Below, piece after piece: positions 1 through 64,000 of a DNA stretch of 64,000 nt. The position numbers and the translations under genes were made by a program. The notes under the pieces are model-generated. The model was not told the origin of the DNA and did no database searches. It saw nothing but the letters and a program-made list of their open reading frames with translations. Origin of the DNA: Auanema rhodensis (lineage: Eukaryota; Animalia; Nematoda); contig OZ059900.1 of assembly GCA_964057225.1 (NCBI GenBank), forward strand, positions 13,082,001 through 13,146,000, in the 5' to 3' direction. Position 1 is the first letter of the stretch; each line of letters begins with the position of its first letter.

Positions 1-95
1 TTGCACACTCATGGTGTGCTTTCCAAAATGTATTTCCAACTCAGAAGTTCTCTGGTTAGATTGAGATACTACCTCTAACTTTGGGTAATTAAACC
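1..95 (-). ncRNA. SL1: SL RNA gene copy 1 with a 23-nt exon (extra A: GGTTTAATTACCCAAAGTTAGAG)
   Basis: The plus strand has AACTTTGGG instead of AACTTGGG. This is unique to this copy and could be a homopolymer sequencing error. Confidence 0.7.
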
Positions 96-292
96 AAATC
101 TATTCAGGAATCTTATGAACTGTTCTAGCCTATCGCCGTATAAGTGATCAGTGTACAAAGCTATACAAAGCTATACAAAGCTTTATCCGGTCAAACTATA
201 ATGTAAAAGACGCGTCATGTTCATATTCAAATTTGTTTTGCTTTGGCATCTATAGGGTCATATAATCATACTAAGGCAGACAGTTTTCAATA

Positions 293-386
293 TTGCACAC
301 TCATGGTGTGCTTTCCAAAATGTATTTCCAACTCAGAAGTTCTCTGGTTAGATTGAGATACTACCTCTAACTTGGGTAATTAAACC
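293..386 (-). ncRNA. SL1: Representative SL1-like SL RNA gene (monomer 2); exon 386-365, donor GT 364-363, Sm site 321-315, stem-loop III 311-295
   Basis: Stem I: AUUACC/GGUAGU spans the donor. Stem II: UCUAAC-CAGAG/UUCUG-A-GUUGGA. Sm site: AUUUUGG. Stem III: GCACAC-CAUGA-GUGUGC. The 3' end is approximate. Confidence 0.92.
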
Positions 387-420
387 AAATCTATTCAGGA
401 AACTTATGAACTGTTCTAGC

Positions 421-456
421 CTATCGCCGTATAAGTGATCAGTGTACAAAGCTATA
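421..456 (-). promoter_or_regulatory. Putative snRNA-type proximal sequence element region (about -35 to -70) upstream of the SL RNA start; repeated in every monomer
   Basis: Positional inference: SL RNA genes use snRNA-type (SNAPc/PSE) promoters at about this distance. The GC-rich TACGGCGATAG segment stands out in an AT-rich spacer. Exact element boundaries cannot be determined by eye. Confidence 0.35.
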
Positions 457-474
457 CAAAGCTATACAAAGCTT
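445..474. repeat. Internal 10-bp direct repeat (TACAAAGCTA)n, 3 copies here; 2, 3 or 4 copies per monomer
   Basis: TACAAAGCTA TACAAAGCTA TACAAAGCTT. Its copy number explains the 281/291/301-bp classes. Four-copy forms lie at 47866-47905, 50716-50755 and 57841-57880. Confidence 0.97.
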
Positions 475-3400
475 TATCCGGTCAAACTATAATGTAAAAG
501 ACGCGTCATGTTCATATTCAAATTTGTTTTGCTTTGGCATCTATAGGGTCATATAATCATACTAAGGCAGACAGTTTTCAATATTGCACACTCATGGTGT
601 GCTTTCCAAAATGTATTTCCAACTCAGAAGTTCTCTGGTTAGATTGAGATACTACCTCTAACTTGGGTAATTAAACCAAATCTATTCAGGAAACTTATGA
701 ACTGTTCTAGCCTATCGCCGTATAAGTGATCAGTGTACAAAGCTATACAAAGCTATACAAAGCTTTATCCGGTCAAACTATAATGTAAAAGACGCGTCAT
801 GTTCATATTCAAATTTGTTTTGCTTTGGCATCTATAGGGTCATATAATCATACTAAGGCAGACAGTTTTCAATATTGCACACTCATGGTGTGCTTTCCAA
901 AATGTATTTCCAACTCAGAAGTTCTCTGGTTAGATTGAGATACTACCTCTAACTTGGGTAATTAAACCAAATCTATTCAGGAAACTTATGAACTGTTCTA
1001 GCCTATCGCCGTATAAGTGATCAGTGTACAAAGCTATACAAAGCTATACAAAGCTTTATCCGGTCAAACTATAATGTAAAAGACGCGTCATGTTCATATT
1101 CAAATTTGTTTTGCTTTGGCATCTATAGGGTCATATAATCATACTAAGGCAGACAGTTTTCAATATTGCACACTCATGGTGTGCTTTCCAAAATGTATTT
1201 CCAACTCAGAAGTTCTCTGGTTAGATTGAGATACTACCTCTAACTTGGGTAATTAAACCAAATCTATTCAGGAAACTTATGAACTGTTCTAGCCTATCGC
1301 CGTATAAGTGATCAGTGTACAAAGCTATACAAAGCTATACAAAGCTTTATCCGGTCAAACTATAATGTAAAAGACGCGTCATGTTCATATTCAAATTTGT
1401 TTTGCTTTGGCATCTATAGGGTCATATAATCATACTAAGGCAGACAGTTTTCAATATTGCACACTCATGGTGTGCTTTCCAAAATGTATTTCCAACTCAG
1501 AAGTTCTCTGGTTAGATTGAGATACTACCTCTAACTTGGGTAATTAAACCAAATCTATTCAGGAAACTTATGAACTGTTCTAGCCTATCGCCGTATAAGT
1601 GATCAGTGTACAAAGCTATACAAAGCTATACAAAGCTTTATCCGGTCAAACTATAATGTAAAAGACGCGTCATGTTCATATTCAAATTTGTTTTGCTTTG
1701 GCATCTATAGGGTCATATAATCATACTAAGGCAGACAGTTTTCAATATTGCACACTCATGGTGTGCTTTCCAAAATGTATTTCCAACTCAGAAGTTCTCT
1801 GGTTAGATTGAGATACTACCTCTAACTTGGGTAATTAAACCAAATCTATTCAGGAAACTTATGAACTGTTCTAGCCTATCGCCGTATAAGTGATCAGTGT
1901 ACAAAGCTATACAAAGCTATACAAAGCTTTATCCGGTCAAACTATAATGTAAAAGACGCGTCATGTTCATATTCAAATTTGTTTTGCTTTGGCATCTATA
2001 GGGTCATATAATCATACTAAGGCAGACAGTTTTCAATATTGCACACTCATGGTGTGCTTTCCAAAATGTATTTCCAACTCAGAAGTTCTCTGGTTAGATT
2101 GAGATACTACCTCTAACTTGGGTAATTAAACCAAATCTATTCAGGAAACTTATGAACTGTTCTAGCCTATCGCCGTATAAGTGATCAGTGTACAAAGCTA
2201 TACAAAGCTATACAAAGCTTTATCCGGTCAAACTATAATGTAAAAGACGCGTCATGTTCATATTCAAATTTGTTTTGCTTTGGCATCTATAGGGTCATAT
2301 AATCATACTAAGGCAGACAGTTTTCAATATTGCACACTCATGGTGTGCTTTCCAAAATGTATTTCCAACTCAGAAGTTCTCTGGTTAGATTGAGATACTA
2401 CCTCTAACTTGGGTAATTAAACCAAATCTATTCAGGAAACTTATGAACTGTTCTAGCCTATCGCCGTATAAGTGATCAGTGTACAAAGCTATACAAAGCT
2501 ATACAAAGCTTTATCCGGTCAAACTATAATGTAAAAGACGCGTCATGTTCATATTCAAATTTGTTTTGCTTTGGCATCTATAGGGTCATATAATCATACT
2601 AAGGCAGACAGTTTTCAATATTGCACACTCATGGTGTGCTTTCCAAAATGTATTTCCAACTCAGAAGTTCTCTGGTTAGATTGAGATACTACCTCTAACT
2701 TGGGTAATTAAACCAAATCTATTCAGGAAACTTATGAACTGTTCTAGCCTATCGCCGTATAAGTGATCAGTGTACAAAGCTATACAAAGCTATACAAAGC
2801 TTTATCCGGTCAAACTATAATGTAAAAGACGCGTCATGTTCATGATCAAATTCATATTGCTTAATCATCTATAGTGTCATATAATCATACTAAGACAGAC
2901 AGTTTTCAATATTGCACACTCATGGTGTGCTTTCCAAAATGTATTTCCAACTCAGAAGTTCTCTGGTTAGATTGAGATACTACCTCTAACTTGGGTAATT
3001 AAACCAAATCTATTCAGGAAACTTATGAACTGTTCTAGCCTATCGCCGTATATGTGATCAGTGTACAAAGATATACAAAGCTTTATCAGGTCAAACTATA
3101 ATGTAAAAGACGTGTCATGTTCATATTCAAATTTGTTTTGCTTTGGCATCTATAGTGTCATATAATCATACTAAGACAGACAGTTTTCAATATTGCACAC
3201 TCATGGTGTGCTTTCCAAAATGTATTTCCAACTCAGAAGTTCTCTGGTTAGATTGAGATACTACCTCTAACTTGGGTAATTAAACCAAATCTATTCAGGA
3301 AACTTATGAACTGTTCTAGCCTATCGCCGTATATGTGATCAGTGTACAAAGATATACAAAGCTTTATCCGGTCAAACTATAATGTAAAAGACGCGTCATG

Positions 3401-24115: not shown

Positions 24116-24209
24116 TTGCACACTCATGGTGTGCTTTCCAAAATGTATTTCCAACTCAGAAGTTCTCTGGTTAGATTGAGATACTACCTCTAACTTGGGT
24201 ATTTAAACC
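24116..24209 (-). ncRNA. SL RNA gene with variant exon GGTTTAAATACCCAAGTTAGAG (also in monomers starting 25261, 25542, 26687, 29537, 32388)
   Basis: The plus strand reads GGGTATTTAAACC in six copies. Confidence 0.85.
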
Positions 24210-28684: not shown

Positions 28685-28778
28685 TTGCACACTCATGGTG
28701 TGCTTTCCAAAATGTATTTTCAACTCAGAAGTTCTCTTTTTAGATTGAGATACTACCTCTAACTTGGGTAATTAAACC
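28685..28778 (-). pseudogene. SL RNA copy with disrupted stem-loop II
   Basis: On the plus strand CTCTGGTTAG becomes CTCTTTTTAG and TTTCC becomes TTTTC, removing three C-G pairs of the predicted stem II. Loss of function is inferred. Confidence 0.45.
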
Positions 28779-32668: not shown

Positions 32669-32762
32669 TTGCACACTCATGGTGTGCTTTCCAAAATGTA
32701 TTTCCAACTCAGAAGTTCTCTGGTTAGATTGAGATACTATCTCTAACTTGGGTAATTAAACC
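32669..32762 (-). pseudogene. SL RNA copy with dead splice donor (GT to AT)
   Basis: A plus-strand C to T at 32740 (TACTATCTCTAAC) changes the first intron base from G to A. Confidence 0.7.
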
Positions 32763-32959
32763 AAATCTATTCAGGAAACTTATGAACTGTTCTAGCCTAT
32801 CGCCGTATATGTGATCAGTGTACAAAGCTATACAAAGCTATACAAAGTTTTATCCTGTCAAACTATAATGTAAAAGACGCGTCATGTTCATGATCAAATT
32901 CATATTGCTTAATCATCTATAGTGTCATATAATCATACTAAGACAGACAGTTTTCAATA

Positions 32960-35900: not shown

Positions 35901-37497
35901 TATTCAGGAAACTTATGAACTGTTCTAGCCTATCGCCGTATATGTGATCAGTGTACAAAGCTATACAAAGCTTTATCGGGTCAAACTATAATGTAAAAGA
36001 CGCGTCATGTTCATATTCAAATTTGTTTTGCTTTGGCATCTATAGTGTCATATAATCATACTAAGACAGACAGTTTTCAATATTGCACACTCATGGTGTG
36101 CTTTCCAAAATGTATTTTCAACTCAGAAGTTCTCTGGTTAGATTGAGATACTACCTCTAACTTGGGTAATTAAACCAAATCTATTCAGGAAACTTATGAA
36201 CTGTTCTAGCCTATCGCCGTATATGTGATCAGTGTACAAAGCTATACAAAGCTTTATCGGGTCAAACTATAATGTAAAAGACGCGTCATGTTCATATTCA
36301 AATTTGTTTTGCTTTGGCATCTATAGTGTCATATAATCATACTAAGACAGACAGTTTTCAATATTGCACACTCATGGTGTGCTTTCCAAAATGTATTTCC
36401 AACTCAGAAGTTCTCTGGTTAGATTGAGATACTACCTCTAACTTGGGTAATTAAACCAAATCTATTCAGGAAACTTATGAACTGTTCTAGCCTATCGCCG
36501 TATATGTGATCAGTGTACAAAGCTATACAAAGCTATACAAAGCTTTATCCGGTGAAACTATAATGTAAAAGACGCGTCATGTTCATATTCAAATTTGTTT
36601 TGCTTTGGCATCTATAGTGTCATATAATCATACTAAGACAGACAGTTTTCAATATTGCACACTCATGGTGTGCTTTCCAAAATGTATTTCCAACTCAGAA
36701 GTTCTCTGGTTAGATTGAGATACTACCTCTAACTTGGGTAATTAAACCAAATCTATTCAGGAAACTTATGAACTGTTCTAGCCTATCGCCGTATATGTGA
36801 TCAGTGTACAAAGCTATACAAAGCTTTATCGGGTCAAACTATAATGTAAAAGACGCGTCATGTTCATATTCAAATTTGTTTTGCTTTGGCATCTATAGTG
36901 TCATATAATCATACTAAGACAGACAGTTTTCAATATTGCACACTCATGGTGTGCTTTCCAAAATGTATTTCCAACTCAGAAGTTTTCTGGTTAGATTGAG
37001 ATACTACCTCTAACTTGGGTAATTAAACCAAATCTATTCAGGAAACTTATGAACTGTTCTAGCCTATCGCCGTATATGTGATCAGTGTACAAAGCTATAC
37101 AAAGCTTTATCGGGTCAAACTATAATGTAAAAGACGCGTCATGTTCATATTCAAATTTGTTTTGCTTTGGCATCTATAGTGTCATATAATCATACTAAGA
37201 CAGACAGTTTTCAATATTGCACACTCATGGTGTGCTTTCCAAAATGTATTTTCAACTCAGAAGTTCTCTGGTTAGATTGAGATACTACCTCTAACTTGGG
37301 TAATTAAACCAAATCTATTCAGGAAACTTATGAACTGTTCTAGCCTATCGCCGTATATGTGATCAGTGTACAAAGCTATACAAAGCTTTATCGGGTCAAA
37401 CTATAATGTAAAAGACGCGTCATGTTCATATTCAAATTTGTTTTGCTTTGGCATCTATAGTGTCATATAATCATACTAAGACAGACAGTTTTCAATA
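32960..37497. repeat. Tandem duplication of an 8-monomer unit (2269 bp)
   Basis: The variant order at 32960-35228 is repeated at 35229-37497, with one private difference (TTGTGAT near 35292). Confidence 0.88.
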
Positions 37498-40400: not shown

Positions 40401-41190
40401 AGATACTACCTCTAACTTGGGTAATTAAACCAAATCTATTCAGGAAACTTATGAACTGTTCTAGCCTATCGCCGAATATGTGATCAGTGTACAAAGCTAT
40501 ACAAAGCTTTATTCGGTCAAACTATAATGTAAAAGACGCGTCATGTTCATATTCAAATTTGTTTTGCTTTGGCATCTATAGTGTCATATAATCATACTAA
40601 GACAGACAGTTTTCAATATTGCACACTCATGGTGTGCTTTCCAAAATGTATTTCCAACTCAGAAGTTCTCTGGTTAGATTGAGATACTACCTCTAACTTG
40701 GGTAATTAAACCAAATCTATTCAGGAAACTTATGAACTGTTCTAGCCTATCGCCGTATATGTGATCAGTGTACAAAGCTATACAAAGCTATACAAAGCTT
40801 TATCCGGTGAAACTATAATGTAAAAGACGCGTCATGTTCATATTCAAATTTGTTTTGCTTTGGCATCTATAGTGTCATATAATCATACTAAGACAGACAG
40901 TTTTCAATATTGCACACTCATGGTGTGCTTTCCAAAATGTATTTCCAACTCAGAAGTTCTCTGGTTAGATTGAGATACTACCTCTAACTTGGGTAATTAA
41001 ACCAAATCTATTCAGGAAACTTATGAACTGTTCTAGCCTATCGCCGAATATGTGATCAGTGTACAAAGCTATACAAAGCTTTATCCGGTCAAACTATAAT
41101 GTGAAAGACGCGTCCTGTTCATATTCAAATTTGTTTTGCTTTGGCATCTATAGTGTCATATAATCATACTAAGACAGACAGTTTTCAATA

Positions 41191-44100
41191 TTGCACACTC
41201 ATGGTGTGCTTTCCAAAATGTATTTCCAACTCAGAAGTTCTCTGGTTAGATTGAGATACTACCTCTAACTTGGGTAATTAAACCAAATCTATTCAGGAAA
41301 CTTATGAACTGTTCTAGCCTATCGCCGTATATGTGATCAGTGTACAAAGCTATACAAAGCTTTATCGGGTCAAACTATAATGTAAAAGACGCGTCATGTT
41401 CATATTCAAATTTGTTTTGCTTTGGCATCTATAGTGTCATATAATCATACTAAGACAGACAGTTTTCAATATTGCACACTCATGGTGTGCTTTCCAAAAT
41501 GTATTTTCAACTCAGAAGTTCTCTGGTTAGATTGAGATACTACCTCTAACTTGGGTAATTAAACCAAATCTATTCAGGAAACTTATGAACTGTTCTAGCC
41601 TATCGCCGTATATGTGATCAGTGTACAAAGCTATACAAAGCTTTATCGGGTCAAACTATAATGTAAAAGACGCGTCATGTTCATATTCAAATTTGTTTTG
41701 CTTTGGCATCTATAGTGTCATATAATCATACTAAGACAGACAGTTTTCAATATTGCACACTCATGGTGTGCTTTCCAAAATGTATTTCCAACTCAGAAGT
41801 TCTCTGGTTAGATTGAGATACTACCTCTAACTTGGGTAATTAAACCAAATCTATTCAGGAAACTTATGAACTGTTCTAGCCTATCGCCGTATATGTGATC
41901 AGTGTACAAAGCTATACAAAGCTATACAAAGCTTTATCCGGTGAAACTATAATGTAAAAGACGCGTCATGTTCATATTCAAATTTGTTTTGCTTTGGCAT
42001 CTTTAGTGTCATATAATCATACTAAGACAGACAGTTTTCAATATTGCACACTCATGGTGTGCTTTCCAAAATGTATTTCCAACTCAGAAGTTCTCTGGTT
42101 AGATTGAGATACTACCTCTAACTTGGGTAATTAAACCAAATCTATTCAGGAAACTTATGAACTGTTCTAGCCTATCGCCGAATATGTGATCAGTGTACAA
42201 AGCTATACAAAGCTTTATCCGGTCAAACTATAATGTAAAAGACGCGTCATGTTCATATTCAAATTTGTTTTGCTTTGGCATCTATAGTGTCATATAATCA
42301 TACTAAGACAGACAGTTTTCAATATTGCACACTCATGGTGTGCTTTCCAAAATGTATTTCCAACTCAGAAGTTCTCTGGTTAGATTGAGATACTACCTCT
42401 AACTTGGGTAATTAAACCAAATCTATTCAGGAAACTTATGAACTGTTCTAGCCTATCGCCGTATATGTGATCAGTGTACAAAGCTATATAAAGCTTTATC
42501 GGGTCAAACTATAATGTAAAAGACGCGTCATGTTCATATTCAAATTTGTTTTGCTTTGGCATCTATAGTGTCATATAATCATACTAAGACAGACAGTTTT
42601 CAATATTGCACACTCATGGTGTGCTTTCCAAAATGTATTTCCAACTCAGAAGTTCTCTGGTTAGATTGAGATACTACCTCTAACTTGGGTAATTAAACCA
42701 AATCTATTCAGGAAACTTATGAACTGTTCTAGCCTATCGCCGTATATGTGATCAGTGTACAAAGCTATACAAAGCTATACAAAGCTTTATCCGGTGAAAC
42801 TATAATGTAAAAGACGCGTCATGTTCATATTCAAATTTGTTTTGCTTTGGCATCTATAGTGTCATATAATCATACTAAGACAGACAGTTTTCAATATTGC
42901 ACACTCATGGTGTGCTTTCCAAAATGTATTTCCAACTCAGAAGTTCTCTGGTTAGATTGAGATACTACCTCTAACTTGGGTAATTAAACCAAATCTATTC
43001 AGGAAACTTATGAACTGTTCTAGCCTATCGCCGAATATGTGATCAGTGTACAAAGCTATACAAAGCTTTATCCGGTCAAACTATAATGTAAAAGACGCGT
43101 CATGTTCATATTCAAATTTGTTTTGCTTTGGCATCTATAGTGTCATATAATCATACTAAGACAGACAGTTTTCAATATTGCACACTCATGGTGTGCTTTC
43201 CAAAATGTATTTCCAACTCAGAAGTTCTCTGGTTAGATTGAGATACTACCTCTAACTTGGGTAATTAAACCAAATCTATTCAGGAAACTTATGAACTGTT
43301 CTAGCCTATCGCCGTATATGTGATCAGTGTACAAAGCTATACAAAGCTTTATCGGGTCAAACTATAATGTAAAAGACGCGTCATGTTCATATTCAAATTT
43401 GTTTTGCTTTGGCATCTATAGTGTCATATAATCATACTAAGACAGACAGTTTTCAATATTGCACACTCATGGTGTGCTTTCCAAAATGTATTTTCAACTC
43501 AGAAGTTCTCTGGTTAGATTGAGATACTACCTCTAACTTGGGTAATTAAACCAAATCTATTCAGGAAACTTATGAACTGTTCTAGCCTATCGCCGTATAT
43601 GTGATCAGTGTACAAAGCTATACAAAGCTTTATCGGGTCAAACTATAATGTAAAAGACGCGTCATGTTCATATTCAAATTTGTTTTGCTTTGGCATCTAT
43701 AGTGTCATATAATCATACTAAGACAGACAGTTTTCAATATTGCACACTCATGGTGTGCTTTCCAAAATGTATTTCCAACTCAGAAGTTCTCTGGTTAGAT
43801 TGAGATACTACCTCTAACTTGGGTAATTAAACCAAATCTATTCAGGAAACTTATGAACTGTTCTAGCCTATCGCCGTATATGTGATCAGTGTACAAAGCT
43901 ATACAAAGCTATACAAAGCTTTATCCGGTGAAACTATAATGTAAAAGACGCGTCATGTTCATATTCAAATTTGTTTTGCTTTGGCATCTTTAGTGTCATA
44001 TAATCATACTAAGACAGACAGTTTTCAATATTGCACACTCATGGTGTGCTTTCCAAAATGTATTTCCAACTCAGAAGTTCTCTGGTTAGATTGAGATACT

Positions 44101-47100
44101 ACCTCTAACTTGGGTAATTAAACCAAATCTATTCAGGAAACTTATGAACTGTTCTAGCCTATCGCCGAATATGTGATCAGTGTACAAAGCTATACAAAGC
44201 TTTATCCGGTCAAACTATAATGTAAAAGACGCGTCATGTTCATATTCAAATTTGTTTTGCTTTGGCATCTATAGTGTCATATAATCATACTAAGACAGAC
44301 AGTTTTCAATATTGCACACTCATGGTGTGCTTTCCAAAATGTATTTCCAACTCAGAAGTTCTCTGGTTAGATTGAGATACTACCTCTAACTTGGGTAATT
44401 AAACCAAATCTATTCAGGAAACTTATGAACTGTTCTAGCCTATCGCCGTATATGTGATCAGTGTACAAAGCTATATAAAGCTTTATCGGGTCAAACTATA
44501 ATGTAAAAGACGCGTCATGTTCATATTCAAATTTGTTTTGCTTTGGCATCTATAGTGTCATATAATCATACTAAGACAGACAGTTTTCAATATTGCACAC
44601 TCATGGTGTGCTTTCCAAAATGTATTTCCAACTCAGAAGTTCTCTGGTTAGATTGAGATACTACCTCTAACTTGGGTAATTAAACCAAATCTATTCAGGA
44701 AACTTATGAACTGTTCTAGCCTATCGCCGTATATGTGATCAGTGTACAAAGCTATACAAAGCTATACAAAGCTTTATCCGGTGAAACTATAATGTAAAAG
44801 ACGCGTCATGTTCATATTCAAATTTGTTTTGCTTTGGCATCTATAGTGTCATATAATCATACTAAGACAGACAGTTTTCAATATTGCACACTCATGGTGT
44901 GCTTTCCAAAATGTATTTCCAACTCAGAAGTTCTCTGGTTAGATTGAGATACTACCTCTAACTTGGGTAATTAAACCAAATCTATTCAGGAAACTTATGA
45001 ACTGTTCTAGCCTATCGCCGAATATGTGATCAGTGTACAAAGCTATACAAAGCTTTATCCGGTCAAACTATAATGTAAAAGACGCGTCATGTTCATATTC
45101 AAATTTGTTTTGCTTTGGCATCTATAGTGTCATATAATCATACTAAGACAGACAGTTTTCAATATTGCACACTCATGGTGTGCTTTCCAAAATGTATTTC
45201 CAACTCAGAAGTTCTCTGGTTAGATTGAGATACTACCTCTAACTTGGGTAATTAAACCAAATCTATTCAGGAAACTTATGAACTGTTCTAGCCTATCGCC
45301 GTATATGTGATCAGTGTACAAAGCTATACAAAGCTTTATCGGGTCAAACTATAATGTAAAAGACGCGTCATGTTCATATTCAAATTTGTTTTGCTTTGGC
45401 ATCTATAGTGTCATATAATCATACTAAGACAGACAGTTTTCAATATTGCACACTCATGGTGTGCTTTCCAAAATGTATTTCCAACTCAGAAGTTCTCTGG
45501 TTAGATTGAGATACTACCTCTAACTTGGGTAATTAAACCAAATCTATTCAGGAAACTTATGAACTGTTCTAGCCTATCGCCGAATATGTGATCAGTGTAC
45601 AAAGCTATACAAAGCTTTATCGGGTCAAACTATAATGTAAAAGACGCGTCATGTTCATATTCAAATTTGTTTTGCTTTGGCATCTATAGTGTCATATAAT
45701 CATACTAAGACAGACAGTTTTCAATATTGCACACTCATGGTGTGCTTTCCAAAATGTATTTCCAACTCAGAAGTTCTCTGGTTAGATTGAGATACTACCT
45801 CTAACTTGGGTAATTAAACCAAATCTATTCAGGAAACTTATGAACTGTTCTAGCCTATCGCCGTATATGTGATCAGTGTACAAAGCTATACAAAGCTATA
45901 CAAAGCTTTATCCGGTGAAACTATAATGTAAAACACGCGTCATGTTCATATTCAAATTTGTTTTGCTTTGGCATCTTTAGTGTCATATAATCATACTAAG
46001 ACAGACAGTTTTCAATATTGCACACTCATGGTGTGCTTTCCAAAATGTATTTCCAACTCAGAAGTTCTCTGGTTAGATTGAGATACTACCTCTAACTTGG
46101 GTAATTAAACCAAATCTATTCAGGAAACTTATGAACTGTTCTAGCCTATCGCCGAATATGTGATCAGTGTACAAAGCTATACAAAGCTTTATCCGGTCAA
46201 ACTATAATGTAAAAGACGCGTCATGTTCATATTCAAATTTGTTTTGCTTTGGCATCTATAGTGTCATATAATCATACTAAGACAGACAGTTTTCAATATT
46301 GCACACTCATGGTGTGCTTTCCAAAATGTATTTCCAACTCAGAAGTTCTCTGGTTAGATTGAGATACTACCTCTAACTTGGGTAATTAAACCAAATCTAT
46401 TCAGGAAACTTATGAACTGTTCTAGCCTATCGCCGTATATGTGATCAGTGTACAAAGCTATATAAAGCTTTATCGGGTCAAACTATAATGTAAAAGACGC
46501 GTCATGTTCATATTCAAATTTGTTTTGCTTTGGCATCTATAGTGTCATATAATCATACTAAGACAGACAGTTTTCAATATTGCACACTCATGGTGTGCTT
46601 TCCAAAATGTATTTCCAACTCAGAAGTTCTCTGGTTAGATTGAGATACTACCTCTAACTTGGGTAATTAAACCAAATCTATTCAGGAAACTTATGAACTG
46701 TTCTAGCCTATCGCCGTATATGTGATCAGTGTACAAAGCTATACAAAGCTATACAAAGCTTTATCCGGTGAAACTATAATGTAAAAGACGCGTCATGTTC
46801 ATATTCAAATTTGTTTTGCTTTGGCATCTATAGTGTCATATAATCATACTAAGACAGACAGTTTTCAATATTGCACACTCATGGTGTGCTTTCCAAAATG
46901 TATTTCCAACTCAGAAGTTCTCTGGTTAGATTGAGATACTACCTCTAACTTGGGTAATTAAACCAAATCTATTCAGGAAACTTATGAACTGTTCTAGCCT
47001 ATCGCCGAATATGTGATCAGTGTACAAAGCTATACAAAGCTTTATCCGGTCAAACTATAATGTAAAAGACGCGTCATGTTCATATCCAAATTTGTTTTGC

Positions 47101-47151
47101 TTTGGCATCTATAGTGTCATATAATCATACTAAGACAGACAGTTTTCAATA
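41191..47151. repeat. Three copies of a 7-monomer higher-order repeat (1987 bp)
   Basis: Units start at 41191, 43178 and 45165. The markers CATCTTTAG and TATATAAAG recur every 1987 bp. Confidence 0.87.
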
Positions 47152-50100
47152 TTGCACACTCATGGTGTGCTTTCCAAAATGTATTTCCAACTCAGAAGTT
47201 CTCTGGTTAGATTGAGATACTACCTCTAACTTGGGTAATTAAACCAAATCTATTCAGGAAACTTATGAACTGTTCTAGCCTATCGCCGTATATGTGATCA
47301 GTGTACAAAGCTATACAAAGCTTTATCGGGTCAAACTATAATGTAAAAGACGCGTCATGTTCATATTCAAATTTGTTTTGCTTTGGCATCTATAGTGTCA
47401 TATAATCATACTAAGACAGACAGTTTTCAATATTGCACACTCATGGTGTGCTTTCCAAAATGTATTTCCAACTCAGAAGTTCTCTGGTTAGATTGAGATA
47501 CTACCTCTAACTTGGGTAATTAAACCAAATCTATTCAGGAAACTTATGAACTGTTCTAGCCTATCGCCGTATATGTGATCAGTGTACAAAGCTATATAAA
47601 GCTTTATCGGGTCAAACTATAATGTAAAAGACGTGTCATGTTCATATTCAAATTTGTTTTGCTTTGGCATCTATAGTGTCATATAATCATACTAAGACAG
47701 ACAGTTTTCAATATTGCACACTCATGGTGTGCTTTCCAAAATGTATTTCCAACTCAGAAGTTCTCTGGTTAGATTGAGATACTACCTCTAACTTGGGTAA
47801 TTAAACCAAATCTATTCAGGAAACTTATGAACTGTTCTAGCCTATCGCCGAATATGTGATCAGTGTACAAAGCTATACAAAGCTATACAAAGCTATACAA
47901 AGCTTTATCGGGTCAAACTATAATGTAAAAGACGCGTCATGTTCATATTCAAATTTGTTTTGCTTTGGCATCTATAGTGTCATATAATCATACTAAGACA
48001 GACAGTTTTCAATATTGCACACTCATGGTGTGCTTTCCAAAATGTATTTCCAACTCAGAAGTTCTCTGGTTAGATTGAGATACTACCTCTAACTTGGGTT
48101 ATTAAACCAAATCTATTCAGGAAACTTATGAACTGTTCTAGCCTATCGCCGAATATGTGATCAGTGTACAAAGCTATACAAAGCTTTATCCGGTCAAACT
48201 ATAATGTAAAAGACGCGTCATGTTCATATTCAAATTTGTTTTGCTTTGGCATCTATAGTGTCATATAATCATACTAAGACAGACAGTTTTCAATATTGCA
48301 CACTCATGGTGTGCTTTCCAAAATGTATTTCCAACTCAGAAGTTCTCTGGTTAGATTGAGATACTACCTCTAACTTGGGTAATTAAACCAAATCTATTCA
48401 GGAAACTTATGAACTGTTCTAGCCTATCGCCGTATATGTGATCAGTGTACAAAGCTATACAAAGCTTTATCGGGTCAAACTATAATGTAAAAGACGCGTC
48501 ATGTTCATATTCAAATTTGTTTTGCTTTGGCATCTATAGTGTCATATAATCATACTAAGACAGACAGTTTTCAATATTGCACACTCATGGTGTGCTTTCC
48601 AAAATGTATTTCCAACTCAGAAGTTCTCTGGTTAGATTGAGATACTACCTCTAACTTGGGTAATTAAACCAAATCTATTCAGGAAACTTATGAACTGTTC
48701 TAGCCTATCGCCGTATATGTGATCAGTGTACAAAGCTATACAAAGCTATACAAAGCTTTATCCGGTGAAACTATAATGTAAAAGACGCGTCATGTTCATA
48801 TTCAAATTTGTTTTGCTTTGGCATCTTTAGTGTCATATAATCATACTAAGACAGACAGTTTTCAATATTGCACACTCATGGTGTGCTTTCCAAAATGTAT
48901 TTCCAACTCAGAAGTTCTCTGGTTAGATTGAGATACTACCTCTAACTTGGGTAATTAAACCAAATCTATTCAGGAAACTTATGAACTGTTCTAGCCTATC
49001 GCCGAATATGTGATCAGTGTACAAAGCTATACAAAGCTTTATCCGGTCAAACTATAATGTAAAAGACGCGTCATGTTCATATTCAAATTTGTTTTGCTTT
49101 GGCATCTATAGTGTCATATAATCATACTAAGACAGACAGTTTTCAATATTGCACACTCATGGTGTGCTTTCCAAAATGTATTTCCAACTCAGAAGTTCTC
49201 TGGTTAGATTGAGATACTACCTCTAACTTGGGTAATTAAACCAAATCTATTCAGGAAACTTATGAACTGTTCTAGCCTATCGCCGTATATGTGATCAGTG
49301 TACAAAGCTATATAAAGCTTTATCGGGTCAAACTATAATGTAAAAGACGCGTCATGTTCATATTCAAATTTGTTTTGCTTTGGCATCTATAGTGTCATAT
49401 AATCATACTAAGACAGACAGTTTTCAATATTGCACACTCATGGTGTGCTTTCCAAAATGTATTTCCAACTCAGAAGTTCTCTGGTTAGATTGAGATACTA
49501 CCTCTAACTTGGGTAATTAAACCAAATCTATTCAGGAAACTTATGAACTGTTCTAGCCTATCGCCGTATATGTGATCAGTGTACAAAGCTATACAAAGCT
49601 ATACAAAGCTTTATCCGGTGAAACTATAATGTAAAAGACGCGTCATGTTCATATTCAAATTTGTTTTGCTTTGGCATCTATAGTGTCATATAATCATACT
49701 AAGACAGACAGTTTTCAATATTGCACACTCATGGTGTGCTTTCCAAAATGTATTTCCAACTCAGAAGTTCTCTGGTTAGATTGAGATACTACCTCTAACT
49801 TGGGTAATTAAACCAAATCTATTCAGGAAACTTATGAACTGTTCTAGCTTATCGCCGAATATGTGATCAGTGTACAAAGCTATACAAAGCTTTATCCGGT
49901 CAAACTATAATGTAAAAGACGCGTCATGTTCATATTCAAATTTGTTTTGCTTTGGCATCTATAGTGTCATATAATCATACTAAGACAGACAGTTTTCAAT
50001 ATTGCACACTCATGGTGTGCTTTCCAAAATGTATTTCCAACTCAGAAGTTCTCTGGTTAGATTGAGATACTACCTCTAACTTGGGTAATTAAACCAAATC

Positions 50101-51426
50101 TATTCAGGAAACTTATGAACTGTTCTAGCCTATCGCCGTATATGTGATCAGTGTACAAAGCTATACAAAGCTTTATCGGGTCAAACTATAATGTAAAAGA
50201 CGCGTCATGTTCATATTCAAATTTGTTTTGCTTTGGCATCTATAGTGTCATATAATCATACTAAGACAGACAGTTTTCAATATTGCACACTCATGGTGTG
50301 CTTTCCAAAATGTATTTCCAACTCAGAAGTTCTCTGGTTAGATTGAGATACTACCTCTAACTTGGGTAATTAAACCAAATCTATTCAGGAAACTTATGAA
50401 CTGTTCTAGCCTATCGCCGTATATGTGATCAGTGTACAAAGCTATATAAAGCTTTATCGGGTCAAACTATAATGTAAAAGACGTGTCATGTTCATATTCA
50501 AATTTGTTTTGCTTTGGCATCTATAGTGTCATATAATCATACTAAGACAGACAGTTTTCAATATTGCACACTCATGGTGTGCTTTCCAAAATGTATTTCC
50601 AACTCAGAAGTTCTCTGGTTAGATTGAGATACTACCTCTAACTTGGGTAATTAAACCAAATCTATTCAGGAAACTTATGAACTGTTCTAGCCTATCGCCG
50701 AATATGTGATCAGTGTACAAAGCTATACAAAGCTATACAAAGCTATACAAAGCTTTATCGGGTCAAACTATAATGTAAAAGACGCGTCATGTTCATATTC
50801 AAATTTGTTTTGCTTTGGCATCTATAGTGTCATATAATCATACTAAGACAGACAGTTTTCAATATTGCACACTCATGGTGTGCTTTCCAAAATGTATTTC
50901 CAACTCAGAAGTTCTCTGGTTAGATTGAGATACTACCTCTAACTTGGGTTATTAAACCAAATCTATTCAGGAAACTTATGAACTGTTCTAGCCTATCGCC
51001 GAATATGTGATCAGTGTACAAAGCTATACAAAGCTTTATCCGGTCAAACTATAATGTAAAAGACGCGTCATGTTCATATTCAAATTTGTTTTGCTTTGGC
51101 ATCTATAGTGTCATATAATCATACTAAGACAGACAGTTTTCAATATTGCACACTCATGGTGTGCTTTCCAAAATGTATTTCCAACTCAGAAGTTCTCTGG
51201 TTAGATTGAGATACTACCTCTAACTTGGGTAATTAAACCAAATCTATTCAGGAAACTTATGAACTGTTCTAGCCTATCGCCGTATATGTGATCAGTGTAC
51301 AAAGCTATACAAAGCTTTATCGGGTCAAACTATAATGTAAAAGACGCGTCATGTTCATATTCAAATTTGTTTTGCTTTGGCATCTATAGTGTCATATAAT
51401 CATACTAAGACAGACAGTTTTCAATA
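45727..51426. repeat. Tandem duplication of a 10-monomer unit (2850 bp)
   Basis: 45727-48576 is repeated at 48577-51426, including the 301-bp monomer (47714, 50564) and the GGGTTATT monomer (48015, 50865). Confidence 0.87.
48015..48108 (-). ncRNA. SL RNA gene with variant exon GGTTTAATAACCCAAGTTAGAG (also in monomers starting 50865, 57990)
   Basis: The plus strand reads GGGTTATTAAACC in three copies. Confidence 0.85.
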
Positions 51427-53423
51427 TTGCACACTCATGGTGTGCTTTCCAAAATGTATTTCCAACTCAGAAGTTCTCTGGTTAGATTGAGATACTACCT
51501 CTAACTTGGGTAATTAAACCAAATCTATTCAGGAAACTTATAAACTGTTCTAGCCTATCGTCGTATATGTGATCAGTGTACAAAGCTATACAAAGCTATA
51601 CAAAGTTTTATCCTGTCAAACTATAATGTAAAAGACGCGTCATGTTCATGATCAAATTCATATTGCTTAATCATCTATAGTGACATATAATCATACTAAG
51701 ACAGACAGTTTTCAATATTGCACACTCATGGTGTGCTTTCCAAAATGTATTTCCAACTCAGAAGTTCTCTGGTTAGATTGAGATACTACCTCTAACTTGG
51801 GTAATTAAACCAAATCTATTCAGGAAACTTATGAACTGTTCTAGCCTATCGCCGTATATGTGATCAGTGTACAAAGCTATACAAAGCTTTATCGGGTCAA
51901 ACTATAATGTAAAAGACGCGTCATGTTCATATTCAAATTTGTTTTGCTTTGGCATCTATAGGTTCATATAATCATACTAAGACAGACAGTTTTCAATATT
52001 GCACACTCATGGTGTGCTTTCCAAAATGTATTTCCAACTCAGAAGTTCTCTGGTTAGATTGAGATACTACCTCTAACTTGGGTAATTAAACCAAATCTAT
52101 TCAGGAAACTTATGAACTGTTCTAGCCTATCGCCGTATATGTGATCAGTGTACAAAGCTATACAAAGCTTTATCGGGTCAAACTATAATGTAAAAGACGC
52201 GTCATGTTCATATTCAAATTTGTTTTGCTTTGGCATCTATAGTGTCATATAATCATACTAAGACAGACAGTTTTCAATATTGCACACTCATGGTGTGTTT
52301 TCCAAAATGTATTTCCAACTCAGAAGTTCTCTGGTTAGATTGAGATACTACCTCTAACTTGGGTAATTAAACCAAATCTATTCAGGAAACTTATGAACTG
52401 TTCTAGCCTATCGCCGTATATGTGATCAGTGTACAAAGCTATACAAAGCTATACAAAGTTTTATCCTGTCAAACTATAATGTAAAAGACGCGTCATGTTC
52501 ATATTCAAATTTGTTTTGCTTTGGCATCTATAGGTTCATATAATCATACTAAGACAGACAATTTTCAATATTGCACACTCATGGTGTGCTTTCCAAAATG
52601 TATTTCCAACTCAGAAGTTCTCTGGTTAGATTGAGATACTACCTCTAACTTGGGTAATTAAACCAAATCTATTCAGGAAACTTATGAACTGTTCTAGCCT
52701 ATCGCCGTATATATGATCAGTGTACAAAGCTATACAAAGCTTTATCGGGTCAAACTATAATGTAAAAGACGCGTCATGTTCATATTCAAATTTGTTTTGC
52801 TTTGGCATCTATAGTGTCATATAATCATACTAAGACAGACAGTTTTCAATATTGCACACTCATGGTGTGCTTTCCAAAATGTATTTCCAACTCAGAAGTT
52901 CTCTGGTTAGATTGAGATACTACCTCTAACTTGGGTAATTAAACCAAATCTATTCAGGAAACTTATGAACTGTTCTAGCCTATCGCCGTATATGTGATCA
53001 GTGTACAAAGCTATACAAAGCTTTATCGGGTCAAACTATAATGTAAAAGACGCGTCATGTTCATATTCAAATTTGTTTTGCTTTGGCATCTATAGTGTCA
53101 TATAATCATACTAAGACAGACAGTTTTCAATATTGCACACTCATGGTGTGCTTTCCAAAATGTATTTCCAACTCAGAAGTTCTCTGGTTAGATTGAGATA
53201 CTACCTCTAACTTGGGTAATTAAACCAAATCTATTCAGGAAACTTATGAACTGTTCTAGCCTATCGCCGTATATGTGATCAGTGTACAAAGCTATACAAA
53301 GCTATACAAAGCTTTATCCGGTGAAACTATAATGTAAAAGACGCGTCATGTTCATATTCAAATTTGTTTTGCTTTGGCATCTTTAGTGTCATATAATCAT
53401 ACTAAGACAGACAGTTTTCAATA

Positions 53424-59500: not shown

Positions 59501-62500
59501 ATCTATTCAGGAAACTTATGAACTGTTCTAGCCTATCGCCGTATATGTGATCAGTGTACAAAGCTATACAAAGCTATACAAAGCTTTATCCGGTGAAACT
59601 ATAATGTAAAAGACGCGTCATGTTCATATTCAAATTTGTTTTGCTTTGGCATCTTTAGTGTCATATAATCATACTAAGACAGACAGTTTTCAATATTGCA
59701 CACTCATGGTGTGCTTTCCAAAATGTATTTCCAACTCAGAAGTTCTCTGGTTAGATTGAGATACTACCTCTAACTTGGGTAATTAAACCAAATCTATTCA
59801 GGAAACTTATGAACTGTTCTAGCCTATCGCCGAATATGTGATCAGTGTACAAAGCTATACAAAGCTTTATCCGGTCAAACTATAATGTAAAAGACGCGTC
59901 ATGTTCATATTCAAATTTGTTTTGCTTTGGCATCTATAGTGTCATATAATCATACTAAGACAGACAGTTTTCAATATTGCACACTCATGGTGTGCTTTCC
60001 AAAATGTATTTCCAACTCAGAAGTTCTCTGGTTAGATTGAGATACTACCTCTAACTTGGGTAATTAAACCAAATCTATTCAGGAAACTTATGAACTGTTC
60101 TAGCCTATCGCCGAATATGTGATCAGTGTACAAAGCTATACAAAGCTTTATCCGGTCAAACTATAATGTAAAAGACGCGTCATGTTCATATTCAAATTTG
60201 TTTTGCTTTGGCATCTATAGTGTCATATAATCATACTAAGACAGACAGTTTTCAATATTGCACACTCATGGTGTGCTTTCCAAAATGTATTTCCAACTCA
60301 GAAGTTCTCTGGTTAGATTGAGATACTACCTCTAACTTGGGTAATTAAACCAAATCTATTCAGGAAACTTATGAACTGTTCTAGCCTATCGCCGAATATG
60401 TGATCAGTGTACAAAGCTATACAAAGCTTTATCCGGTCAAACTATAATGTAAAAGACGCGTCATGTTCATATTCAAATTTGTTTTGCTTTGGCATCTATA
60501 GTGTCATATAATCATACTAAGACAGACAGTTTTCAATATTGCACACTCATGGTGTGCTTTCCAAAATGTATTTCCAACTCAGAAGTTCTCTGGTTAGATT
60601 GAGATACTACCTCTAACTTGGGTAATTAAACCAAATCTATTCAGGAAACTTATGAACTGTTCTAGCCTATCGCCGTATATGTGATCAGTGTACAAAGCTA
60701 TATAAAGCTTTATCGGGTCAAACTATAATGTAAAAGACGCGTCATGTTCATATTCAAATTTGTTTTGCTTTGGCATCTATAGTGTCATATAATCATACTA
60801 AGACAGACAGTTTTCAATATTGCACACTCATGGTGTGCTTTCCAAAATGTATTTCCAACTCAGAAGTTCTCTGGTTAGATTGAGATACTACCTCTAACTT
60901 GGGTAATTAAACCAAATCTATTCAGGAAACTTATGAACTGTTCTAGCCTATCGCCGTATATGTGATCAGTGTACAAAGCTATACAAAGCTATACAAAGCT
61001 TTATCCGGTGAAACTATAATGTAAAAGACGCGTCATGTTCATATTCAAATTTGTTTTGCTTTGGCATCTATAGTGTCATATAATCATACTAAGACAGACA
61101 GTTTTCAATATTGCACACTCATGGTGTGCTTTCCAAAATGTATTTCCAACTCAGAAGTTCTCTGGTTAGATTGAGATACTACCTCTAACTTGGGTAATTA
61201 AACCAAATCTATTCAGGAAACTTATGAACTGTTCTAGCCTATCGCCGAATATGTGATCAGTGTACAAAGCTATACAAAGCTTTATCCGGTCAAACTATAA
61301 TGTAAAAGACGCGTCATGCTCATATTCAAATTTGTTTTGCTTTGGCATCTATAGTGTCATATAATCATACTAAGACAGACAGTTTTCAATATTGCACACT
61401 CATGGTGTGCTTTCCAAAATGTATTTCCAACTCAGAAGTTCTCTGGTTAGATTGAGATACTACCTCTAACTTGGGTAATTAAACCAAATCTATTCAGGAA
61501 ACTTATGAACTGTTCTAGCCTATCGCCGTATATGTGATCAGTGTACAAAGCTATACAAAGCTATACAAAGCTTTATCGGGTCAAACTATAATGTAAAAGA
61601 CGCGTCATGTTCATATTCAAATTTGTTTTGCTTTGGCATCTATAGGTTCATATAATCATACTAAGACAGACAGTTTTCAATATTGCACACTCATGGTGTG
61701 CTTTCCAAAATGTATTTCCAACTCAGAAGTTCTCTGGTTAGATTGAGATACTACCTCTAACTTGGGTAATTAAACCAAATCTATTCAGGAAACTTATGAA
61801 CTGTTCTAGCCTATCGCCGTATATGTGATCAGTGTACAAAGCTATACAAAGCTTTATCGGGTCAAACTATAATGTAAAAGACGCGTCATGTTCATATTCA
61901 AATTTGTTTTGCTTTGGCATCTATAGTGTCATATAATCATACTAAGACAGACAGTTTTCAATATTGCACACTCATGGTGTGTTTTCCAAAATGTATTTCC
62001 AACTCAGAAGTTCTCTGGTTAGATTGAGATACTACCTCTAACTTGGGTAATTAAACCAAATCTATTCAGGAAACTTATGAACTGTTCTAGCCTATCGCCG
62101 TATATGTGATCAGTGTACAAAGCTATACAAAGCTATACAAAGTTTTATCCTGTCAAACTATAATGTAAAAGACGCGTCATGTTCATATTCAAATTTGTTT
62201 TGCTTTGGCATCTATAGTGTCATATAATCATACTAAGACAGACAATTTTCAATATTGCACACTCATGGTGTGCTTTCCAAAATGTATTTCCAACTCAGAA
62301 GTTCTCTGGTTAGATTGAGATACTACCTCTAACTTGGGTAATTAAACCAAATCTATTCAGGAAACTTATGAACTGTTCTAGCCTATCGCCGTATATGTGA
62401 TCAGTGTACAAAGCTATACAAAGCTTTATCGGGTCAAACTATAATGTAAAAGACGCGTCATGTTCATATTCAAATTTGTTTTGCTTTGGCATCTATAGTG

Positions 62501-63669
62501 TCATATAATCATACTAAGACAGACAGTTTTCAATATTGCACACTCATGGTGTGCTTTCCAAAATGTATTTCCAACTCAGAAGTTCTCTGGTTAAATTGAG
62601 ATACTACCTCTAACTTGGGTAATTAAACCAAATCTATTCAGGAAACTTATGAACTGTTCTAGCCTATCGCCGTATATGTGATCAGTGTACAAAGCTATAC
62701 AAAGCTTTATCGGGTCAAACTATAATGTAAAAGACGCGTCATGTTCATATTCAAATTTGTTTTGCTTTGGCATCTATAGTGTCATATAATCATACTAAGA
62801 CAGACAGTTTTCAATATTGCACACTCATGGTGTGCTTTCCAAAATGTATTTCCAACTCAGAAGTTCTCTGGTTAGATTGAGATACTACCTCTAACTTGGG
62901 TAATTAAACCAAATCTATTCAGGAAACTTATGAACTGTTCTAGCCTATCGCCGTATATGTGATCAGTGTACAAAGCTATACATAGCTATACAAAGCTTTA
63001 TCCGGTGAAACTATAATGTAAAAGACGCGTCATGTTCATATTCAAATTTGTTTTGCTTTGGCATCTTTAGTGTCATATAATCATACTAAGACAGACAGTT
63101 TTCAATATTGCACACTCATGGTGTGCTTTCCAAAATGTATTTCCAACTCAGAAGTTCTCTGGTTAGATTGAGATACTACCTCTAACTTGGGTAATTAAAC
63201 CAAATCTATTCAGGAAACTTATGAACTGTTCTAGCCTATCGCCGAATATGTGATCAGTGTACAAAGCTATACAAAGCTTTATCCGGTCAAACTATAATGT
63301 AAAAGACGCGTCATGTTCATATTCAAATTTGTTTTGCTTTGGCATCTATAGTGTCATATAATCATACTAAGACAGACAGTTTTCAATATTGCACACTCAT
63401 GGTGTGCTTTCCAAAATGTATTTCCAACTCAGAAGTTCTCTGGTTAGATTGAGATACTACCTCTAACTTGGGTAATTAAACCAAATCTATTCAGGAAACT
63501 TATGAACTGTTCTAGCCTATCGCCGTATATGTGATCAGTGTACAAAGCTATATAAAGCTTTATCGGGTCAAACTATAATGTAAAAGACGCGTCATGTTCA
63601 TATTCAAATTTGTTTTGCTTTGGCATCTATAGTGTCATATAATCATACTAAGACAGACAGTTTTCAATA

Positions 63670-63763
63670 TTGCACACTCATGGTGTGCTTTCCAAAATGT
63701 ATTTCCAACTCAGAAGTTCTCTGGTTAGATTGAGATACTACCTCTAACTTGGGTAATTAAACC
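63670..63763 (-). ncRNA. SL1: Last complete SL1-like RNA gene in the window
   Basis: Consensus exon, donor, Sm site and hairpins are present. Positions 63961-64000 hold only the 3' part (Sm site, stem III) of one more copy. Confidence 0.9.
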
Positions 63764-64000
63764 AAATCTATTCAGGAAACTTATGAACTGTTCTAGCCTA
63801 TCGCCGTATATGTGATCAGTGTACAAAGCTATACAAAGCTATACAAAGCTTTATCCGGTGAAACTATAATGTAAAAGACGCGTCATGTTCATATTCAAAT
63901 TTGTTTTGCTTTGGCATCTATAGTGTCATATAATCATACTAAGACAGACAGTTTTCAATATTGCACACTCATGGTGTGCTTTCCAAAATGTATTTCCAAC

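What the first reader, a model, noticed from the sequence alone, without database searches (positions are those of the whole stretch)
1..64000. The apparent satellite is a giant, compact array of spliced-leader (trans-splicing) RNA genes on the minus strand
Seen: every monomer contains, in reverse complement, a 22-nt GGTTTAATTACCCAAGTTAGAG exon, then GT, a hairpin, ATTTTGG and a final hairpin, over about 94 nt. Established: this matches the exon sequence and the three-stem-loop plus Sm-site layout of nematode SL1 RNA, the donor in SL trans-splicing. Inference: these are at least 224 SL RNA genes at one per ~285 bp, in an array a repeat masker would probably discard as satellite. The array likely continues past both window ends.
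Basis: partly seen in the sequence, partly recalled or inferred. Interest (0 to 1): 0.9.

Follow-up and report, generated by a model that had tools for sequence, protein, structure and literature searches.

The report
Tandem array of spliced-leader RNA genes
The whole 64-kb window is a satellite-like array of about 224 near-identical, intact-looking nematode spliced-leader RNA genes with a one-letter variant leader, a layout already known from root-knot nematodes, though standard RNA annotation misses it here and its use in trans-splicing was not shown.

Summary
One tandem array fills 1-64000, with 224 units of mostly 281 or 291 bp. Every unit carries, on the minus strand, a 95-nt SL1-type spliced-leader (SL) RNA gene.

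- **Gene features:** the 22-nt leader is exact in 212 copies and differs from canonical SL1 only at position 19 (U to A). The GU donor follows in 223 copies, and AUUUUGG is intact in all 225 full or partial copies.
- **Rfam:** SL1 matches full length at 38 bits (E 2.5e-4). This is below the gathering score of 75, so routine annotation returns nothing.
- **Variation:** copies differ 4.6 times less in the gene than in the spacer.
- **Nothing else found:** no 5S rRNA gene, other known RNA family or ORF.

The kind is known. The Meloidogyne 295-bp satellite MelSat01 is an SL RNA gene array (PMC9673304), and C. elegans has a 5S-SL1 array.

Earlier notes of this scan report similar SL arrays at four other places in this genome. 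They also name the genome as probably Auanema rhodense, which discards most tandem repeats from body cells. The 2026 preprint on that genome does not mention SL genes.

Not shown: expression, leader use, and whether the array is kept in somatic cells. The RNA runs gave only low-depth contigs of the whole unit.

Verdict: new member of a known kind, moderate interest.

The parts
1..64000 (-). Head-to-tail array of 224 units (281/291/292/301 bp), each holding one SL RNA gene. It reaches both window edges.
583..677 (-). Representative SL RNA gene, 95 nt. RNA position p corresponds to window coordinate 678-p.
   Evidence: Rfam SL1 RF00198 aligns over model positions 1-103/103, 38 bits, E 2.5e-4. 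170 of 223 copies have exactly this sequence.
656..677 (-). 22-nt leader exon GGTTTAATTACCCAAGTTAGAG. It is SL1 with U19A; position 19 lies in the loop of the model's stem-loop I.
654..655 (-). GU splice donor directly after the leader.
   Evidence: AGAG+GTAGT occurs 223 times.
606..612 (-). Sm-site core AUUUUGG (RNA 66-72), unpaired in both the minimum-energy and the canonical fold.
   Evidence: 225/225 intact; folds.
586..602 (-). Stem-loop III: 6-bp stem (RNA 76-81 with 87-92) and a 5-nt loop carrying the common T84C variant.
618..643 (-). Stem-loop II of the canonical model (RNA 35-44 with 50-60).
   Evidence: Constrained fold, -23.5 kcal/mol.
678..735 (-). Non-repetitive proximal upstream region (-1 to -58); the -1 to -42 part varies little between copies. 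Presumed snRNA-type promoter (inference).
   Evidence: Diversity profile.
736..764 (.). 10-bp microrepeat TACAAAGCTA, 1.9, 2.9 or 3.9 copies, about -59 to -87 from the gene start. Its copy number sets the 281/291/301-bp size classes.
558..582 (-). Low-variation 3' flank (+96 to about +120). Presumed 3'-end formation signal (inference).
35300..52400 (-). Segment with a 7-unit higher-order repeat (1987 bp: five 281-bp and two 291-bp units).
   Evidence: Mean distance 3.7 at lag 7 against about 9 at other lags; spacing string.
96..3005 (-). Run of ten consecutive 291-bp units, eight of them identical, suggesting a recently homogenised block.

Best explanation
The window is part of a very large head-to-tail array of SL1-type spliced-leader RNA genes of a rhabditid nematode, probably Auanema rhodense according to other notes of this scan. 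Each 281/291-bp unit is most likely an independent snRNA-type RNA polymerase II transcription unit. It would consist of a promoter in the roughly 190-bp spacer, a 95-nt SL RNA that binds Sm proteins at AUUUUGG, and a 3'-end signal just downstream. The SL RNA would donate its first 22 nt, a U19A variant of SL1, to the 5' ends of pre-mRNAs by trans-splicing. The array itself evolves like a satellite, through unequal exchange, local homogenisation and higher-order repeats. Shown here: the array, the gene anatomy, the homology to SL1, and lower variation in the gene than in the spacer. Inferred: the promoter and 3' signal, transcription, and use of the leader.
For: Array and exact leader. The Rfam SL1 model aligns full length to every unit, E 2.5e-4, with leader 21/22 identical, GGUA donor, AUUUUGGAA and a compensated 3' stem. 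The canonical three-stem fold is only 2.8 kcal/mol above the minimum-energy fold, and stem III and the unpaired Sm site appear in all near-optimal folds. Diversity between copies is 0.0052 in the gene and 0.0241 in the spacer; segregating sites are 15/95 vs 54/186, Fisher p=0.019. 170 of 223 genes are identical, the Sm core is intact in 225/225 and the donor in 223/224. Low variation extends to about +120 and over -42..-1, as expected for flanking control signals. No other gene is present: no ORF of 90 aa or more, and no other Rfam family even at E up to 1. Precedent: Meloidogyne MelSat01, a 295-bp satellite, is the Mi-SL1b gene, with the same pattern of a conserved gene and a variable spacer. 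Sequencing runs of more distant organisms hold about 0.12-0.31 of the sampled words, roughly the gene's share of the unit (suggestive only).
Against: There is no direct evidence of expression or leader use. The four RNA libraries gave only assembler contigs containing the whole unit, spacer included, at depth 2-8, which could be DNA carry-over or read-through. The Rfam score is half the gathering score. The minimum-energy fold is not the canonical one, and stem I keeps only 6 of the model's 10 pairs. The 5' purine of the textbook Sm motif R-A-U4-6-G-R is a C here. In Meloidogyne the satellite-borne variant is the less used leader in ESTs. If the genome is A. rhodense, most tandem-repeat blocks are discarded from somatic cells, so this array might not serve the soma. 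A conserved box within a satellite unit can also arise without function.
Confidence: 0.62

Rival explanations
1. This is an SL-derived satellite. An SL RNA gene was captured and amplified as a tandem repeat in repeat-rich, possibly germline-restricted, heterochromatin. Most or all copies are silent, and the working leader supply comes from other loci.
For: The array shows satellite behaviour: higher-order repeats, 87 distinct unit variants and size classes set by a microrepeat. RNA contigs cover the spacer as much as the gene, at low depth. In Meloidogyne the satellite-borne SL variant is the minor one in ESTs. The probable host genome eliminates about 61% of its DNA, mostly tandem repeats, from the soma. 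Variant copies include pair-breaking changes and one dead donor, with no compensatory pairs.
Against: The gene varies 4.6 times less than the spacer, and the Sm site and donor are almost perfectly preserved. No canonical SL1 leader is present in the window. Other first-stage notes on arrays in this genome also describe a variant or near-perfect SL1 leader rather than the canonical one. Sharing of only a gene-sized fraction of words by more distant organisms hints at constraint on the gene.
Confidence: 0.33
2. The resemblance to SL RNA is coincidental, and the repeat is an ordinary satellite unrelated to trans-splicing.
For: The Rfam score is below gathering. An 18-nt piece of the leader also occurs in unrelated repeated elements of metagenome contigs.
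Against: The unit shows a 21/22 match to SL1 at the exact 5' end of a full-length model alignment, followed by GU, an Sm core at the expected distance and a terminal hairpin, with E 2.5e-4 per unit. Shuffles give 0 matches.
Confidence: 0.01

Closest known systems
Meloidogyne MelSat01 / INC satellite = Mi-SL1b SL RNA gene array (PMC9673304)
   Same: Both are nematode satellites of about 290 bp (295 vs 281/291) whose unit is one SL1-type SL RNA gene plus a spacer, without 5S rDNA. Both leaders are single-substitution variants of SL1. In both, the gene part is conserved and the spacer is variable.
   Different: The sequences are unrelated outside the leader and Sm core (consensus read). The leader change differs (…TTTAAG vs …TTAGAG here). 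The nematode suborder differs. The Meloidogyne array has FISH and transcription data; this one has none.
C. elegans SL1 / 5S rDNA tandem cluster, about 110 copies of a 1-kb unit (as described in PMC1657053)
   Same: Both are tandem, homogenised SL1 gene arrays supplying the major leader. The SL RNA has the same architecture, which is the Rfam SL1 family.
   Different: Here there is no 5S gene in the unit. The unit is 3.5 times shorter. The window alone holds twice the C. elegans copy number. The leader has U19A, whereas the C. elegans leaders are monomorphic and canonical.
Pristionchus pacificus SL1 RNA genes, at least 619 copies (PMC7986045), and Oscheius tipulae, where SL1 and 5S are not clustered (PMC8022731)
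   Same: These are rhabditid nematodes with hundreds of SL1 genes and/or loss of the 5S linkage.
   Different: No satellite-style array of SL-only units of about 285 bp is described in the passages read.
Tandem ncRNA gene arrays (5S rRNA, tRNAs, U2) in germline-restricted DNA of Auanema rhodense (preprint 10.64898/2026.08.27.747507)
   Same: Probably the same genome. Functional-type small RNA genes are amplified as tandem arrays inside repeat blocks.
   Different: SL RNA is not mentioned in that preprint. The four published FISH probes (AT-1, XR-1, XT-1, XT-2) do not match this array. The array's elimination status is unknown.
Mini-exon (SL RNA) gene arrays of trypanosomatids (textbook knowledge, not checked here)
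   Same: Hundreds of head-to-tail SL RNA genes with short spacers.
   Different: The SL system and promoter type are of independent origin.

Membership tests
Nematode SL1 RNA (Rfam RF00198) | 22-nt leader of SL1 sequence at the 5' end | tested here: met
   21/22 identical to the model consensus, with one change at position 19 in the loop of stem I. Exact in 212 of 224 copies.
Nematode SL1 RNA (Rfam RF00198) | GU splice donor immediately after the leader | tested here: met
   223 of 224 copies.
Nematode SL1 RNA (Rfam RF00198) | Single-stranded Sm-binding site (purine-A-U4-6-G-purine, as quoted in PMC6362198) between hairpins | tested here: met
   The AUUUUGG core is intact in 225/225 copies and unpaired in all near-optimal folds. 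The 5' flanking base is C rather than a purine.
Nematode SL1 RNA (Rfam RF00198) | Three stem-loop secondary structure | tested here: inconclusive
   The canonical arrangement folds at -23.5 kcal/mol against -26.3 for the minimum-energy fold. Stem I keeps 6 of 10 model pairs and stem III is robust. There is no covariation evidence because copies are near-identical.
Nematode SL1 RNA (Rfam RF00198) | Score at or above Rfam's curated gathering threshold | tested here: not met
   38 bits against 75, E 2.5e-4 in a 3.5-kb search; no hit at gathering in the whole window. This is a curators' cut-off, not a biological feature; the shortfall comes from the divergent intron part.
Nematode SL1 RNA (Rfam RF00198) | A transcribed ~100-nt RNA whose leader is found on mRNAs | not testable with these tools
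   The only RNA data available were assembler contigs, which hold the whole unit at depth 2-8.
SL-RNA-gene satellite (MelSat01 type) | Long homogeneous tandem array whose unit is one SL RNA gene plus spacer, with no 5S | tested here: met
SL-RNA-gene satellite (MelSat01 type) | Gene part less variable than the spacer | tested here: met
   Diversity 0.0052 vs 0.0241; Fisher p=0.019 on segregating sites. This compares copies within one array, not species.
Germline-restricted tandem repeats of Auanema rhodense | Located in DNA lost from somatic cells (low somatic coverage, beyond a break site) | not tested
   Species identity and position rest on other agents' notes. No coverage data could be obtained. 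Four published repeat probes do not match.

The most novel reading that the evidence does not exclude
The SL-gene arrays are one of the large 'satellite' repeat families of the Auanema rhodense germline genome and lie in DNA that is discarded from somatic cells at the 12-cell stage. The worm would then keep a germline-only reservoir of well over a thousand SL RNA genes, for example to load oocytes and early embryos with leader RNA, while the soma runs on a small retained set. The mirror version would also be new: the array is one of the X-linked repeat blocks that escape elimination, which would give a functional reason for their retention.
Probability: 0.35. Interest if true: 0.65.

Novelty: new member of a known kind. 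Interest (0 to 1): 0.4.

Why it matters
**Annotation.** Infernal/Rfam at its default threshold reports nothing in this window. Hundreds to thousands of SL RNA genes in this genome are therefore probably labelled plain satellite. The 2026 description of the probable source genome lists 5S, tRNA and U2 arrays but no SL genes.

**Biology.** SL1 is almost invariant across rhabditid nematodes. A U19A leader fixed in a huge array would, if it is the leader in use, be a natural variant for studying what the leader sequence does in transcription and translation.

**DNA elimination.** In a species that discards most tandem repeats from body cells, it becomes directly testable whether an essential small-RNA gene family sits in discarded or retained DNA. 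The answer bears on why some repeat blocks are kept.

Tried and rejected
- **Literature, sequence searches:** no paper holds the 22-nt U19A leader, its last 12 nt, or six pieces of the SL RNA. The three hits for the 12-mer are unrelated papers.
- **Meloidogyne as source:** I tested whether the window is Meloidogyne MelSat01. The consensus in that paper's Table S5 differs in leader ending, intron and spacer, so it is an analogue, not the same repeat.
- **RNA evidence:** the four RNA runs exist only as assembler contigs. They show the complete unit, including the 291-bp wrap-around, at depth 2-8, with no ends at the gene borders. They neither support nor refute expression.
- **Metagenome scans:** the full leader gives 0 hits. 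An 18-nt piece gives 24 loci, but all lack the GGTT start and the GU donor and mostly belong to another repeated element, with no Rfam match. They are irrelevant.
- **Link to named A. rhodense repeat families:** the probes for AT-1, XR-1, XT-1 and XT-2 have no match within 3 mismatches. The preprint's repeat table is an image and could not be read.
- **Other content in the unit:** no ORF of 90 aa or more, and no 5S or other Rfam family.
- **Shared promoter motif with MelSat01:** only a 7-mer at different distances is shared, which is expected by chance, so I did not pursue it.
- **Auanema genome papers:** neither the 2019 paper nor the 2026 survey of elimination in rhabditids mentions spliced leaders.
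Full report
**Observation**

Tandem Repeats Finder describes the entire window as one array: 1..64000, period 281, 224.1 copies, 96% matches. The 22-nt sequence GGTTTAATTACCCAAGTTAGAG occurs 212 times exactly, always on the minus strand. None of 100 dinucleotide-preserving shuffles has a match.

Allowing a few changes gives 224 anchors. They are spaced 281 bp (126 times), 291 (87), 292 (6), 301 (3) and 290 (1). The size classes come from 1.9, 2.9 or 3.9 copies of a 10-bp microrepeat, TACAAAGCTA, in the spacer. Both window edges lie inside the array.

**Anatomy of a unit**

Read on the minus strand (for example 677 down to 583), each unit has these parts in order:
- the 22-nt leader;
- GU;
- about 40 nt able to form hairpins;
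- ACAUUUUGGAA;
- a perfect 6-bp hairpin;
- CAAU.

Rfam's SL1 model (RF00198) aligns to every unit over its full length (model positions 1-103) at 38 bits, E 2.5e-4 in a 3.5-kb search. No other family appears even at E up to 1.

Against the model consensus, the leader differs only at position 19 (U to A). That position lies in the loop of the model's first stem-loop.

The score is below Rfam's gathering threshold of 75 bits. A whole-window search at gathering returns nothing, and so no 5S rRNA either. There are no ORFs of 90 aa or more.

**Folding**

The minimum-energy fold is -26.3 kcal/mol (z = -2.9 against shuffles). It pairs the leader's 3' half with the region just upstream of the Sm site, and it leaves AUUUUGG unpaired and the 3' hairpin formed.

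Forcing the canonical layout gives -23.5 kcal/mol, which is within the near-optimal set:

| Element | RNA positions |
|---|---|
| Stem I | 7-12 with 22-27 |
| Stem II | 35-44 with 50-60 |
| Sm site | free |
| Stem III | 76-81 with 87-92 |

The three-stem layout is therefore possible but not preferred in silico. The copies are too alike for covariation evidence.

**Signs of constraint**

I aligned 223 complete units.

| Measure | 95-nt gene | Spacer |
|---|---|---|
| Nucleotide diversity between copies | 0.0052 | 0.0241 |
| Segregating sites | 15 of 95 | 54 of 186 |

The difference in segregating sites gives Fisher p = 0.019. Of the 223 genes, 170 are identical and a further 19 differ only by T84C in the loop of stem III.

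The Sm core is intact in all 225 full or partial copies, and the donor context in 223 of 224. Low variation also covers about 25 nt downstream of the gene and the 42 nt upstream, while the middle of the spacer is the variable part. This fits a 3'-end signal and a proximal promoter, but neither was identified by motif; that is inference.

Minor variants include leader changes (T8A and T9A, about 11 copies), pair-breaking changes in stems II and III, and one GT-to-AT donor. A small share of copies is therefore probably defective.

**Array dynamics**

There are 87 distinct unit sequences. Between about 35 and 52 kb, units repeat with a period of seven (1987 bp); the mean distance is 3.7 at lag 7 against about 9 at other lags. 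Between about 24 and 35 kb the period is ten. The first 3 kb is a run of 291-bp units, eight of them identical. This is typical satellite-style homogenisation.

**RNA evidence**

Twenty-two public runs from eight coded organisms hold words of the unit. Laying the four RNA-labelled runs gave only assembler contigs. Each library has one or two contigs covering the unit, spacer included, at word depth 2-8, with the 291-bp wrap-around joint and no ends at the gene borders.

This shows neither a discrete 95-nt transcript nor leader-tagged mRNAs, and it is compatible with DNA carry-over. Expression and use of the leader therefore remain untested.

The more distant organisms hold 0.12-0.31 of the sampled words. 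That is about the gene's share of the unit, so it hints that the gene is conserved while the spacer diverges. I could not lay those runs.

**What is known**

- No paper in the library contains this leader or pieces of this SL RNA.
- The organisation itself is published. In Meloidogyne, the 295-bp satellite MelSat01 (the older INC satellite) is the SL RNA gene Mi-SL1b. It has low variability over the roughly 90-bp gene, complete conservation of the leader and Sm site, a variable spacer, six FISH sites and moderate transcription. ESTs mostly carry the other variant, Mi-SL1a.
- I read the MelSat01 consensus. Its leader ends TTTAAG, and its intron and spacer are unrelated to those here. This window is therefore an independent example, not that repeat.
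- C. elegans has about 110 monomorphic SL1 genes in a 1-kb repeat with 5S.
- P. pacificus has at least 619 SL1 genes.
- In O. tipulae, SL1 and 5S are not clustered.
- Single-substitution SL1 variants have been seen at low frequency in several nematodes.

**Genome context (leads from other notes of this scan, only partly checked)**

First-stage notes report similar SL arrays elsewhere in this genome:
- 122 kb before this window: 39 kb of 281-bp units;
- 370 kb beyond it: 291-bp units;
- on two other pieces.

The scan has thus found this before on other DNA of the same genome. The total may reach well over a thousand genes.

Follow-up agents concluded that the genome is almost certainly Auanema rhodense. 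They place a programmed-DNA-elimination break site next to a tRNA-Asp array 1.09 Mb beyond this window, and a gene/satellite junction 303 kb before it.

The August 2026 preprint on that genome reports the following:
- about 61% of the germline genome is lost from somatic cells, mostly multi-megabase tandem repeats with units of 167-504 bp;
- some X-linked repeat blocks are retained;
- arrays of 5S, tRNA and U2 genes lie in eliminated DNA.

The preprint never mentions spliced-leader genes, and its RNA annotation used Infernal. Given the sub-threshold Rfam score found here, such genes would have been missed.

Its four FISH probes (AT-1, XR-1, XT-1, XT-2) do not match this window within three mismatches. 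The array is therefore none of those four families. The repeat-family table is an image and could not be read.

I could not verify the species from this window, nor whether the array is eliminated or retained. The dates of the public runs (2019 DNA and RNA, 2023 DNA) agree with the Auanema data sets but do not prove the identity.

**Explanation**

The best reading (about 0.6) is a genuine SL RNA gene array. Each unit would be a small Pol II snRNA-type gene whose product assembles with Sm proteins and donates the A19 leader in trans-splicing, while the array is maintained by concerted evolution.

The main rival (about 0.3) is an SL-derived satellite that is largely silent and perhaps germline-restricted, with the working leader supplied from elsewhere. 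The Meloidogyne precedent and the elimination biology keep this rival alive. The preserved Sm site and donor and the lower variation in the gene argue against it.

Chance resemblance is excluded for practical purposes.

**Dead ends**

Metagenome scans gave nothing for the full leader. For an 18-nt piece they returned 24 unrelated loci that lack the GGTT start and the GU donor.

**Verdict**

Function is unproven.

This is a new member of a known kind, not a new kind. It has three points of interest:
- an unreported U19A leader fixed across the array;
- invisibility to default Rfam annotation;
- a testable link to programmed DNA elimination.

Noticed in passing
window 35300-52400 and 24000-35300: Higher-order repeats within the SL array: a 7-unit period (1987 bp) and a 10-unit period, respectively. 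The window start is a run of 291-bp units, eight of them identical.
   Followed up: partly
window 736-764 and the equivalent place in every unit: A 10-bp microrepeat, TACAAAGCTA, at about -59 to -87 from the gene start varies between 1.9, 2.9 and 3.9 copies. It alone explains the 281/291/301-bp unit sizes and changes the distance between the far spacer and the presumed promoter.
   Followed up: partly
L001:3183-3335 and 17 similar loci (L002, L003, L006-L011, L013-L018, L021-L024): Metagenome contigs from a few JGI samples carry a repeated element that contains 18 nt identical to the leader's 3' part, followed by TACAAAATCGCGTCAA and so on. It has no GGTT start, GU donor or Rfam match, so it is unrelated to SL RNA. 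Its nature is unknown.
   Followed up: partly
window 514-566 (run X13): One RNA-library contig matches 53 nt of the spacer with 5 differences and then continues for 170 nt of unlike sequence. It may be a junction of a diverged array copy with other DNA.
   Followed up: no
window 1-95: The first copy has an extra A in the leader (CCCAAAGTT) and scores only 24.9 bits with the SL1 model. It is a defective copy at the edge of the homogeneous 291-bp block.
   Followed up: no
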